Source of the DNA: Octopus sinensis | Lineage: Eukaryota | Assembly (NCBI RefSeq): GCF_006345805.1 | Contig: NC_043007.1 | Span: 26,412,001 to 26,476,000 of the forward strand | Length of the DNA stretch: 64,000 nucleotides | Reading direction: 5' to 3' | Shown: one piece after another, positions 45,781 through 48,147 of the stretch | Layout of the letters: each line of letters opens with the position of its first letter | Position numbering within the stretch: the first letter of the stretch is position 1 | Translations under genes and position numbers: made by a program | Notes under the pieces: model-generated | Database searches by the model: none | Seen by the model: only the letters and a program-made list of their open reading frames with translations | What the model was told of the DNA's origin: nothing

Positions 45781-48147
45781 TGAGAAAAATTATTAGAGGT
45801 ATTTCGTCTATCTTTACATTCTGATTTCAAATTGCTTCGAAGCCCACTTCGCATTTTCATTCTTTCGGGATTGATAAAATATATATCAGTGGGTTAGGGC
45901 TAGGGTTAGAGTTAGGGTTAGGGTTAGAATTAGGGTTAGAATTAGGGTTAGGGTTAGGCTTAGGGTTAAGGTTAGGGTTAGAATTAGGGTTAGAATTAGG
46001 GTTAGGGTTAGGCTTAGGGTTAGGCTTAGGGTTAGGGTTAGGGTTAGGCTAGAGTTAGAGTTAGGGTTAGGGTTAGGGTTAAGGTTAGGGTTAGGGTTAG
46101 GTTTAGGGTTAGGATTAGGGTTAGAGTTAGGGTTAGAGTTAGAGTTAGAGTTAGGGTTAGGGTCAGGGATAGGGTTAGGGTTAGGGTTAGAGTTAGGGTT
46201 ATGGTTAGGGTTAGGGTTAGAGTTAGAGTGAGGGTTAGGGTTTGAGTTAGGGTTAGGGTTAGGGTTGGGGTTAGGGTTAGGGGTAGGGTTAGGCTTGGGG
46301 TTAGGGTTAGGTTTACGGTAAGGGTTAGGTATGGGATAGGGTTAGAGTCAGAGTCAGGGTTAGGGTCAGGGTTAGTGTAAGGGTTAAGTTTGGGGTTAGG
46401 TTTAGAGTTAGAGTTAGGGTTAGGGTTAGAGTTAGGTGTTAGCGTTAGGGTTAGGGTTAGAGTTAGGGTTCGGGTTTGGGTTAGGGTTAGGGTTAGAGTT
46501 AGGGTTAGGGTTAGGGTTAGGATTAGGGTTAGAGTTAGGGTTAGGGTTAGAGTTAGGGTTAGGGTTAGAGTTAGGGTTAGAGTTAGGGTTAGGGTTAGAG
46601 TTAGGGATAGGGTTAGATTTAGGGTTAAGGTTAGGGTTACGGTTAGGGTTAGAGTTAGAGTTAGGGTTAGGGTTAGGATTAGGTTTAGGGTTAGGGTTAG
46701 GGTTAGGGTTAGAGTTAGGGTTAGGTTTAGAGTTAGGGTTAGGATTAGGGTTAGGGTTACTGTTAGGGTTAGGGTTAGGGTTAGGGTTAGGGTTACGGTT
46801 AGTGTTAGGGTTGGATTTAGGGTTAGATTTAGGGTTAGATTTAGGGTTGGGATTAGAGTTAGGGTTAGGGTTAGGGTTAGGTTTAGGTTTAGGGTTAGGT
46901 TTACGTTCAGGGTTAGGGTAAGGGTGAGGGTTAGGGTTAGGGTTAGAGTAAGTTTTAGGGTTATGGTTTGTGTGAGGGTTATGGTAAATGATAGGTTTAG
47001 GGTTAGAGTTAGGGTTAGAGTTAGGGATGGAGTTAGGTTTAGGATTGGGGTTAGGTTAGGGTTAGGGTTTGTGTTAGGGATCAGGTTAGGGTTAAGGTAA
47101 GGGTTAGGTTTAGGGTTAGGGTTAAGGTTTAGAGTTAGAGTTAGGGTTAGGGTTAGGGATAGGATGAGGTTTAGGGTTAGTGTTAGGGATAGGGTTAGGG
47201 TTAGGGTTATGGTTAAGGATAGAGTTAGGGTTTAGGGTTGAGGTTAGGGTTAACTTTAGGGTTAGGGTTTAATATTTTGGGTTAGGTTTAGGTTTAGGGT
47301 TAGGATTTTGGGTTGGCTTAGGGTTAGGGTTAGTGTTAGGTTTAGGCTCAGGGTTAGGTTTAGGGTTGGGGTTAGTGTTTGGTTTAGGGTTAGTGTTAGG
47401 GTTAGGGCCAGGGTTACGGTTTGTGTTAATGTTAGGGTTATAGTTAGGGTAAGGGTTAGGGTTTGTGTTAGGGTTAGGGTTAGGGTTAGGGTTAGGGCTA
47501 GGGTTAGGTTTAGTGTTAGGTCTAGGGTTAGTGTTAGGGTTAGGTTTAGGGTCAGGGTTAGTGTTACGGTTAGGTTTAGGGTTAGGGTTAGGTTTAGGTT
47601 TAGGTTTAGGGTTAGGGTTAGGGTTTAGTATTAGGGTTAGGTTTAGGGTTAGGGTTAGGTTTCGGGCTAGGTTTAACGTAGGTTAGGTTTAAGGTTAGGT
47701 TTAGATTTAGGGTTAGTTTTAGGGTTAGGGTTAGAGTTAGGGTCAGGCTTAGGGTTAGGGTTATGGTTAGGGTTAAGTTTAGGATTAGTGTTAGGGATAG
47801 GGCTTAGGGTTTAGGGTTTGGGTTAGCATTTGGGTTATGTTTAGTGTTCAGTTTAGGTTTAGTGTTGGGATTAGGTTTATGTTTAGGGTTAGGGATTTGG
47901 GTTAAGGTTAGGGTTACTGTTAATGTTAGGGTTAGTGTTAGGGTTAGGGTTAATTGTAGGGTTTGGTTTAGATTTAGTTTTAGGGTCAGGATTAGTGTTA
48001 GACTTAGGGTTAGGTTTAGGTTTAGGGTCAGGTTAGGGTTAGGGTTAGGGTTAGTTTTAGGGTTAGTGTTAGGGTTAGGGTCGATGTAATTGTCTTAACC
48101 TGTCCTTCAAAATCACTGGCCTTGTGCAAAAAATGAGAAACCAATAT
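45781..48147 (+). mobile_element. Old SINE split by the telomeric array (5' half 45781-45890; 3' half ~48078-48147)
   Basis: Left: GGTATTTCGTCTATCTTTACATTCTGATTTCAAATT..TTTCATTCTTTCGGGATTGATAAAATATATATCAGT. Right: GGGTCGATGTAATTGTCTTAACC..AAAATCACTGGCCTTGTGC..GAAACCAATAT. Collinear with intact copies such as 30530-30695. Confidence 0.75.
45891..48080 (+). repeat. Interstitial telomeric (TTAGGG)n array, ~2.19 kb, degenerate
   Basis: About 365 hexamer-equivalents, all G-strand on plus; variants TTAGAG, TTAGGT, TTAGTG, TCAGGG. Confidence 0.97.

What the first reader, a model, noticed from the sequence alone, without database searches (positions are those of the whole stretch)
45781..48147. A 2.2-kb telomeric array inserted into the middle of a single SINE copy
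Seen: the 5' half of an old SINE ends ..GATAAAATATATATCAGT at 45890, then (TTAGGG)n runs to 48080, then the SINE resumes TCGATGTAATTG.. The consensus gap is only about 8 bp, and the last GGG of the array doubles as the SINE GGGGTCGAT. There is no (CCCTAA)n arm. Known: short interstitial telomeres that interrupt pre-existing repeats are attributed to telomerase acting at double-strand breaks, whereas fusions give head-to-head arrays. Inference: telomerase-mediated break repair with microhomology, followed by expansion. It is long for this class.
Basis: partly seen in the sequence, partly recalled or inferred. Interest (0 to 1): 0.7.

Follow-up and report, generated by a model that had tools for sequence, protein, structure and literature searches.

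The report
Telomere-repeat array splitting an octopus SINE
A 2.2-kb, one-directional and partly decayed run of the telomere repeat TTAGGG sits inside a single old octopus-type SINE with only about 8-9 bases of the SINE lost, which is the known scar of a chromosome break patched with telomere repeats, here unusually long and in a mollusc.

Summary
A period-6 array occupies 45891-48081: about 365 units, 87% identical to perfect (TTAGGG)n, 153 units perfect. It has no CCCTAA arm and no foreign insert. Its flanks are the two halves of one old tRNA-derived SINE, spanning about 45749 to about 48170. Both halves carry the marks of the same subfamily, and they are collinear with 10 aligned copies in the window. 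Those copies read CCAGT-TACGCACT-GGGGTCGATG at this site, with variants, and none holds a telomeric unit. Only 8-9 nt are missing. The SINE's G-run coincides with a GGG of the array, but it can be assigned to either junction.

This fits the class of interstitial telomeric sequences inserted at double-strand breaks, described in vertebrates. It differs in length: about 365 units against 2-25 in human. Variant units fall into domains (TTAGAG in the 5' half, TTAGGT/TTAGTG in the 3' half, p=2e-8), and one 54-bp internal duplication survives. Part of the length therefore arose by growth in place.

Two things are not shown: that telomerase did it, rather than captured or copied telomeric DNA, and that the junction homology is real. 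No orthologous empty site or reads could be fetched.

Verdict: a new member of a known kind, of modest interest.

The parts
45749..45890 (+). 5' half of one old tRNA-derived octopus-type SINE (head GGGCGACGAGC, core up to ..GATAAAATATATATCAGT). It carries the subfamily marks TCTTTACAT and GATAAAATA.
   Evidence: blastn to 14 places in the window; alignment with 10 copies; local alignments with z = 14-29
45891..48081 (+). Unidirectional degenerate (TTAGGG)n array, about 365 units, with the G-rich strand on the SINE sense strand
   Evidence: TRF; 87% identity to a perfect array; unit census; no CCCTAA arm; no foreign segment
45911..46025 (+). Internal duplication of a 54-bp (9-unit) block that carries the same TTAGAA/TTAGGC variants
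   Evidence: Lag-54 self-match of at least 53/54 in windows rich in variant units; visible in the sequence
45891..46986 (+). 5' half of the array: TTAGAG-rich domain (G2>A 37 against 12 in the other half), 90% identity to the perfect repeat over most bins
46987..48081 (+). 3' half of the array: TTAGGT/TTAGTG-rich domain (G3>T 40 against 15; G2>T 25 against 5), 83-87% identity
48078..48080 (+). GGG that can be read either as the last GGG of the array or as part of the SINE's GGGGTCGATG. The array's first GGG at 45891-45893 is an equally valid candidate.
48081..48170 (+). 3' half of the same SINE: TCGATGTAATTGTCTTAACC, then the tail ..CAAAATCACTGGCCTTGTGCAAAAAATGAGAAACCAATATGTTAT.. of the same subfamily as the copies at 55850-56080 and 30505-30720
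   Evidence: 0 matches expected by chance; 57/76 identities, z = 12.3; 50/70, z = 7.7

Best explanation
This is a mutational scar, not a working element.

An old SINE copy in an octopod genome suffered a double-strand break at its small CCAGT-N5-ACTGG palindrome, next to a GGGG run. Telomeric repeats were laid down on the + strand 3' end, most simply by telomerase. The extended end was rejoined to the other side of the break by end joining, with loss of 8-9 nt, and the SINE's own G-run lies in frame with the repeats.

The tract then behaved like a minisatellite. Early slippage or unequal exchange copied already-mutated units, which gave a TTAGAG-rich 5' half and a TTAGGT/TTAGTG-rich 3' half. 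Afterwards the tract decayed by point mutation to 87% identity.

Shown: the insertion into one contiguous SINE, the small deletion, the single orientation, the absence of other sequence, and the clustering of variants. Inferred: the break, the enzyme, the use of microhomology, and how long the tract was at first.
For: - Array anatomy.
- Single SINE: the left flank ends at position 147 and the right flank starts at 156 of the same reference copy. Both halves carry marks of the same subfamily. All 10 aligned copies are uninterrupted at the site and have no telomeric unit there.
- Growth in place: TTAGAG against TTAGGT+TTAGTG positions, p = 2.4e-8. Substitutions are uneven among the three G's, p = 4e-6 and 4e-8, and differ strongly between the halves. 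Identical variants within 2 units: 25 observed against 12.6 expected, p = 0.0006. A 54-bp duplication survives.
- Literature: vertebrate short interstitial telomeric sequences appear in one step at break sites, with short deletions, random additions and 1-3 nt in frame with the repeats, and some lie inside LINEs or LTRs (PMC8537989). TTAGGG is the only experimentally determined cephalopod telomere motif, in Amphioctopus areolatus (Adachi 2014, as cited in PMC13218726 and PMC6160780). Interstitial tracts expand by slippage and unequal exchange (PMC6410037).
Against: - I found no orthologous empty site, so one-step insertion is not shown.
- At about 365 units the tract is more than 10 times the human short class of 2-25 copies (PMC6410037).
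- The left junction, CAGT|GGGTTAGGG, is not in telomerase register unless the alternative placement (..CACTGGG|TTAGGG, one mismatch) is right.
- About half of the variant units are not among the common variant types. Most of the length was therefore already there before most mutations, so a long initial insert is not excluded.
- Only one clear internal duplication survives.
- The GGG overlap is weak evidence of microhomology, because every unit ends in GGG.
Confidence: 0.72

Rival explanations
1. The same break-repair scar, but without telomerase. Either a piece of extrachromosomal telomeric DNA (for example from a t-circle) was captured by end joining, or a broken end ending in GGG invaded a telomere or another interstitial tract, copied repeats and switched back on GGG microhomology (a templated insertion).
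For: GGG is present at both ends of the array. The variant-rich domains could have been copied from a variant-rich proximal telomere. The kb-scale length is easier to obtain in one step from an existing tract. The left junction is out of telomerase register.
Against: Nothing in the sequence separates this from telomerase. For the related TERC-flanked class, the vertebrate literature judges t-circle involvement unlikely (PMC8537989). That argument rests on TERC fragments, which are absent here.
Confidence: 0.17
2. Microsatellite birth in place. A small deletion in the SINE, for example loss of CGCACT from CAGTTACGCACTGGGG, created CAGTTAGGGG. This single telomere-like unit was then duplicated and expanded by slippage, with no break and no telomeric machinery.
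For: The commonest SINE form in the window has TTA and GGGG six bases apart at exactly this site. The genome is extremely rich in microsatellites, and SINE-derived tandem arrays occur. The array did grow in place.
Against: The observed left junction is CAGTGGGTTAGGG, not CAGTTAGGG. The copies of the host's own subfamily read CACTGGAGTACTGTGG, CAATTGCGTACTGTGG and CAGTTAAGTCCTG there, without the TTA..GGGG arrangement. None of the 10 aligned copies shows even one extra unit. A single hexamer is a poor slippage substrate. That the motif should be exactly the telomeric one would be a coincidence.
Confidence: 0.06
3. Assembly artefact. The array is a collapsed or chimeric join, or its length is wrong.
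For: Telomere-like arrays are classic sites of misjoins. No reads were available to me.
Against: A misjoin would not reunite the two halves of one SINE at adjacent coordinates, in the same orientation and from the same subfamily. The array has a unique, non-periodic pattern of variants that long reads can anchor.
Confidence: 0.05

Closest known systems
Short interstitial telomeric sequences (s-ITS) inserted at double-strand breaks, as described in primates, rodents and perissodactyls (Nergadze, Azzalin, Giulotto and co-workers; PMC8537989)
   Same: A unidirectional TTAGGG tract interrupts otherwise contiguous sequence. A short deletion lies at the site. A few flanking nucleotides are in frame with the repeats. 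The host sequence can be a transposable element.
   Different: About 365 units (2.2 kb) against 2-25 copies in human (PMC6410037). The tract is strongly degenerate, with domains of variant units. The host is a cephalopod mollusc, not a vertebrate. The empty site is inferred from paralogous SINE copies, not from an ortholog.
TERC-ITS (telomeric repeats flanked by a fragment retrotranscribed from telomerase RNA; PMC8537989)
   Same: Telomeric repeats at a break site, sometimes inside LINEs or LTRs, with deletions at the junction.
   Different: There is no non-hexamer sequence at either junction or inside the array, so there is no room for a telomerase-RNA fragment.
Subtelomeric and fusion ITS, and heterochromatic ITS (het-ITS) (PMC6410037)
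   Same: Degenerate TTAGGG-like repeats, as in subtelomeric and fusion tracts. Amplification by slippage or unequal exchange, as proposed for het-ITS.
   Different: There is no head-to-head CCCTAA arm. The flanks are one SINE, not two chromosome ends. The tract is 2.2 kb, not tens of kb to Mb. The chromosomal position is unknown.
Microsatellites and minisatellites seeded inside SINEs
   Same: A tandem array embedded in a SINE and growing in place. The same window holds SINE-derived tandem arrays.
   Different: The unit is the telomeric hexamer, not SINE sequence. SINE bases are deleted rather than duplicated.

Membership tests
s-ITS inserted at a double-strand break | Head-to-tail TTAGGG repeats in one orientation only | tested here: met
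   57 TTAGGGTTAGGG and 0 CCCTAACCCTAA in the window; TRF period 6
s-ITS inserted at a double-strand break | The tract interrupts sequence that is contiguous in an empty (ancestral) site | tested here: met
   Tested with paralogous SINE copies only. The flanks map to positions 147 and 156 of one reference copy, and all 10 aligned copies are uninterrupted. I could not fetch an orthologous empty locus.
s-ITS inserted at a double-strand break | Junction changes typical of end joining: a short deletion and/or 1-3 nt in frame with the repeats | tested here: met
   8-9 nt of the SINE are missing, and the SINE G-run coincides with a GGG of the array. Which junction carries the overlap is ambiguous.
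s-ITS inserted at a double-strand break | A limited number of hexamers (2-25 copies in human) | tested here: not met
   About 365 units, 2191 bp; length range from PMC6410037
s-ITS inserted at a double-strand break | Appears in one step in evolution (presence/absence among related species) | not testable with these tools
   No cephalopod genome collection was available. The flank ORF is not on record. The closest relative of the neighbouring RT ORF is only 59% identical.
TERC-ITS | A fragment retrotranscribed from telomerase RNA next to the repeats | tested here: not met
   The repeats abut SINE sequence directly on both sides. No 18-nt window falls below 67% identity to the hexamer register.
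Fusion ITS | Head-to-head (TTAGGG)n-(CCCTAA)n arrays that join two former chromosome ends | tested here: not met
   No CCCTAA arm; the flanks are one SINE
Heterochromatic ITS | Very large blocks (tens of kb to Mb) in (peri)centromeric heterochromatin | tested here: not met
   2.2 kb, flanked by ordinary interspersed repeats and microsatellites. The chromosomal position is unknown.
Octopod tRNA-derived SINE (the host element) | Collinear match to the family's head, core and tail | tested here: met
   The head is too decayed to be called a tRNA (ARAGORN found 0 genes; Rfam found 0 matches). SINE expansion is specific to octopuses among cephalopods (Marino et al. 2022, as cited in PMC13218726).

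The most novel reading that the evidence does not exclude
The CCAGT-N5-ACTGG palindrome plus GGGG run of this very abundant octopus SINE may be a recurrent breakage and telomere-seeding site. Many kb-scale interstitial telomeric tracts in octopod genomes would then sit at the same SINE position, having been laid down in one step by a processive germline telomerase. SINE expansion would thereby have supplied sites for new telomeres and for chromosome rearrangement. One locus cannot exclude this. No other copy in this window shows it.
Probability: 0.07. Interest if true: 0.6.

Novelty: new member of a known kind. Interest (0 to 1): 0.3.

Why it matters
The paralogous SINE copies supply the missing empty site, so this locus gives a junction-level example of telomere repeats inserted at a break outside vertebrates. 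The papers I found on molluscs mention interstitial TTAGGG tracts only at chromosome scale (PMC12506671). It also shows that a tract of this origin can reach or keep kilobase length and then evolve as a minisatellite. That bridges the 'short' and 'amplified' classes. For genome assemblers it is a reminder that a kb-long TTAGGG tract inside a scaffold need not be a misjoin or a fusion point. It does not open a new question.

Tried and rejected
1. Fetching the same or an orthologous locus.
- The 101-aa ORF just downstream of the array (48269-48574) is not on record.
- The neighbouring LINE RT ORF has no close relative. The best hit is 59% identical, and the named hits are Argonauta hians and Acanthosepion pharaonis. 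It gave the taxon but no ortholog.

2. Scans of metagenome contigs.
- The exact right junction gave 0 hits.
- A general pattern of SINE core plus telomere gave 11 hits. All are unrelated telomeres or interstitial tracts of other eukaryotes, without the SINE. This says nothing about recurrence.

3. Target-site duplications of the SINE. The only candidate is 12/14 in AT-rich sequence (45731 against 48143), and it overlaps what looks like SINE tail. Inconclusive.

4. Rfam and ARAGORN found nothing in the window.

5. Higher-order periodicity. Beyond the one 54-bp duplication there is none. Self-identity falls smoothly with lag because of the 17 indels.

6. Dating the array against the SINE. The window holds too few copies of the host subfamily for a consensus. 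The pairwise identities of 65-71% for the left half mix subfamily differences with age, so only 'the SINE is old' can be said.

7. Rejected readings: fusion point (no inverted arm), TERC-ITS (no extra sequence), and a transposon carrying telomeric repeats (nothing but hexamers in the insert).

Full report
**What is there**

The stretch 45891-48081 is a tandem array of period 6: 364.7 copies, 77% match between neighbouring copies, score 2381. It is by far the strongest tandem repeat in the window. I aligned it to a perfect cyclic TTAGGG. It is 87.1% identical, with 266 substitutions and 17 single-base indels. Of 365 units, 153 are perfect.

The doubled unit TTAGGGTTAGGG occurs 57 times inside the array and nowhere else in the 64 kb. 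The complementary CCCTAACCCTAA does not occur at all. So the array runs in one direction, with the G-rich strand on the + strand. No 18-nt window drops below 67% identity to the hexamer register. The whole 2191 bp is therefore hexamer-derived, and no other sequence is embedded.

**The flanks**

The window comes from an octopod cephalopod. A decayed non-LTR retrotransposon lies 3-6 kb upstream, with endonuclease and reverse-transcriptase domains. Its best named relatives are in Argonauta hians and Acanthosepion pharaonis. The window is also full of a tRNA-derived SINE. SINE expansion is an octopus-specific trait among cephalopods (Marino et al. 2022, as cited in PMC13218726).

The left flank matches SINE copies at 14 other places in the window. 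The right flank begins with GGGTCGATGTAATTGTCTTAACC. That motif recurs in two other copies, where 0 matches are expected by chance.

In a multiple alignment with 10 copies, the two flanks joined together are collinear with a full SINE:
- The head, GGGCGACGAGC, starts at about 45749.
- The core runs to ..GATAAAATATATATCAGT at 45890.
- The element resumes at (GGG)TCGATGTAAT at 48078/48081.
- The tail runs to about 48170.

The left half carries TCTTTACAT and GATAAAATA. The right half carries the tail ..CAAAATNNCTGGCNTTGT..CAAAAT..GAAACC... Both are marks of the same older subfamily as the copies at 30505-30720 and 55850-56080 (right half: 50/70 identities, z = 7.7; 57/76, z = 12.3). On one reference copy the left flank ends at position 147 and the right flank starts at 156.

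That condition is not met. A target-site duplication could not be established.

**The junctions**

The commonest form among the aligned copies reads CCAGT-TACGCACT-GGGGTCGATG at this site. Copies of the host's own subfamily have variants of the middle part. None contains a telomeric unit.

The locus reads ..TCAGT | GGGTTAGGGCTAGGG ... GGGTTAGGG | TCGATG... Eight nucleotides, plus one G of the GGGG run, are missing.

- The array both starts and ends with GGG.
- CCAGT...ACTGG is a palindrome. The locus's CAGTGGG can therefore equally be the SINE's CACTGGG, with one mismatch. In that reading the repeats follow the SINE's G-run in frame, and the 8-nt loss lies just upstream.

As written, CAGT|GGG is not in telomerase register. 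In the alternative placement it is. With 13% divergence in the array and about 30% in the SINE, this cannot be settled from one sequence.

**History of the array**

The variant units are not spread evenly:
- TTAGAG (31 units) lies almost wholly in the first 60% of the array. TTAGGT (29 units) and TTAGTG (15 units) lie mostly in the second half (Mann-Whitney p = 2.4e-8).
- By halves, G2>A is 37 against 12, G2>T is 5 against 25, and G3>T is 15 against 40.
- The three G's differ strongly in how often they are hit (p = 4e-6 and 4e-8).
- Identical variants lie within two units of each other twice as often as after shuffling: 25 against 12.6, p = 0.0006. After shuffling within 60-unit blocks, p = 0.047.
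- A 54-bp block carrying TTAGAA and TTAGGC variants is duplicated at 45911-46025.

Independent point mutation of a tract made in one piece does not produce this pattern. Copying of already-mutated units does.

On the other hand, about half of the variant units are not among the common variant types, and no other long internal duplication survives. Most of the length is therefore old, and the array is now decaying. Purity is slightly higher in the 5' half (about 0.90) than in the 3' half (about 0.85). That is the opposite of a true chromosome end.

**Best explanation**

Vertebrate short interstitial telomeric sequences appear suddenly at unrelated loci. They come with short deletions, random additions and one to three flanking nucleotides in frame with the repeats, and some lie inside LINEs or LTRs. 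They are read as telomerase-assisted repair of double-strand breaks (PMC8537989). TTAGGG is the only experimentally determined cephalopod telomere motif (Adachi 2014, as cited in PMC13218726 and PMC6160780).

The locus has every structural mark of that class except length. Human tracts have 2-25 copies (PMC6410037). This one has about 365.

I therefore read it as follows. The SINE broke at or next to its G-run. Telomeric repeats were added to the + strand 3' end. The ends were rejoined with loss of 8-9 nt. The tract then expanded early by slippage or unequal exchange, mechanisms proposed for the amplification of such tracts (PMC6410037). After that it decayed. My confidence in this outline is about 0.7. 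The enzyme is inferred.

**Rivals**

1. The same repair, without telomerase. A piece of extrachromosomal telomeric DNA was captured, or a broken end switched template into a telomere on GGG microhomology. The product would be identical, and a kb-scale, variant-rich insert would be easier to obtain in one step (confidence 0.17).

2. Birth by slippage. Loss of CGCACT from CAGTTACGCACTGGGG would create one TTAGGG unit. But the junction does not read that way. The host's own subfamily lacks the TTA..GGGG arrangement, and no other copy shows even one extra unit (confidence 0.06).

3. Misassembly. A misjoin would not reunite the two halves of one SINE at adjacent coordinates (confidence 0.05).

A fusion point and a TERC-flanked insertion are excluded.

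**What could not be done**

No cephalopod genome collection was available, so there is no orthologous empty site, no spanning reads and no genome-wide census. The flank ORF is not on record. The junction scan found nothing. The looser scan found only unrelated eukaryotic telomere contigs.

**Verdict**

The locus is a new member of a known kind: an unusually long, old interstitial telomeric tract of the break-repair type, in a mollusc, with the empty site supplied by paralogous SINE copies. Interest is modest (0.3).

Noticed in passing
window 3017-3555 and 63673-63978; also 30326-30720 and 55509-56080: SINE sequence forms tandem arrays: 178 bp x 3.0 at 95% match, and 122 bp x 2.5 at 92% match. 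Full SINEs are followed directly by head-less SINE units of another subfamily. So these SINEs also multiply locally as tandem or composite units.
   Followed up: partly
window 1608-1961: A 34-bp minisatellite (10.6 copies, with a 102-bp higher-order period). Its unit contains GATCGATAAAATAA, which resembles the SINE core GGTCGATAAAATAAGTACC. It may be a SINE-derived minisatellite.
   Followed up: no
window 39699-42930 (+) and 10722-13743 (-): Two decayed non-LTR retrotransposons, each broken into several ORFs. The first has Exo_endo_phos and RVT_1 domains, the second has RVT_1. The best named relatives are in Argonauta hians (51-73% identity), which places the window in an octopod.
   Followed up: partly
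window 45891-48081: G>T transversions make up 94 of the 266 substitutions in the array. They are concentrated at the third G of the unit and in the 3' half. Transitions are only 110 of 266. Part of this reflects copied variants, and the rest is unexplained.
   Followed up: partly
window 48507-48600, 49062-49130 and 18300-18330: A short repeated element (..GGGGTTCCAGCATGGCTGCAGCCACATGGTTGTAGTATGTAAAAGAATACATACA..) recurs next to TATG/ACAC microsatellites. It looks like another small interspersed repeat family.
   Followed up: no
window 4691-6131: Long GTG/TAG/GGT trinucleotide-rich, low-complexity stretch that gives 100-240-aa ORFs on both strands. It looks like simple sequence rather than coding.
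   Followed up: no
L003 and L009 (metagenome contigs Ga0209491_10054444, Ga0209390_10072055): Two near-identical contigs of an unidentified eukaryote hold a short head-to-head tract (GGGTTAGGG..GGGGTTA/CCCGAACCCTAACCC) between directly repeated sequence. They are unrelated to the window.
   Followed up: no
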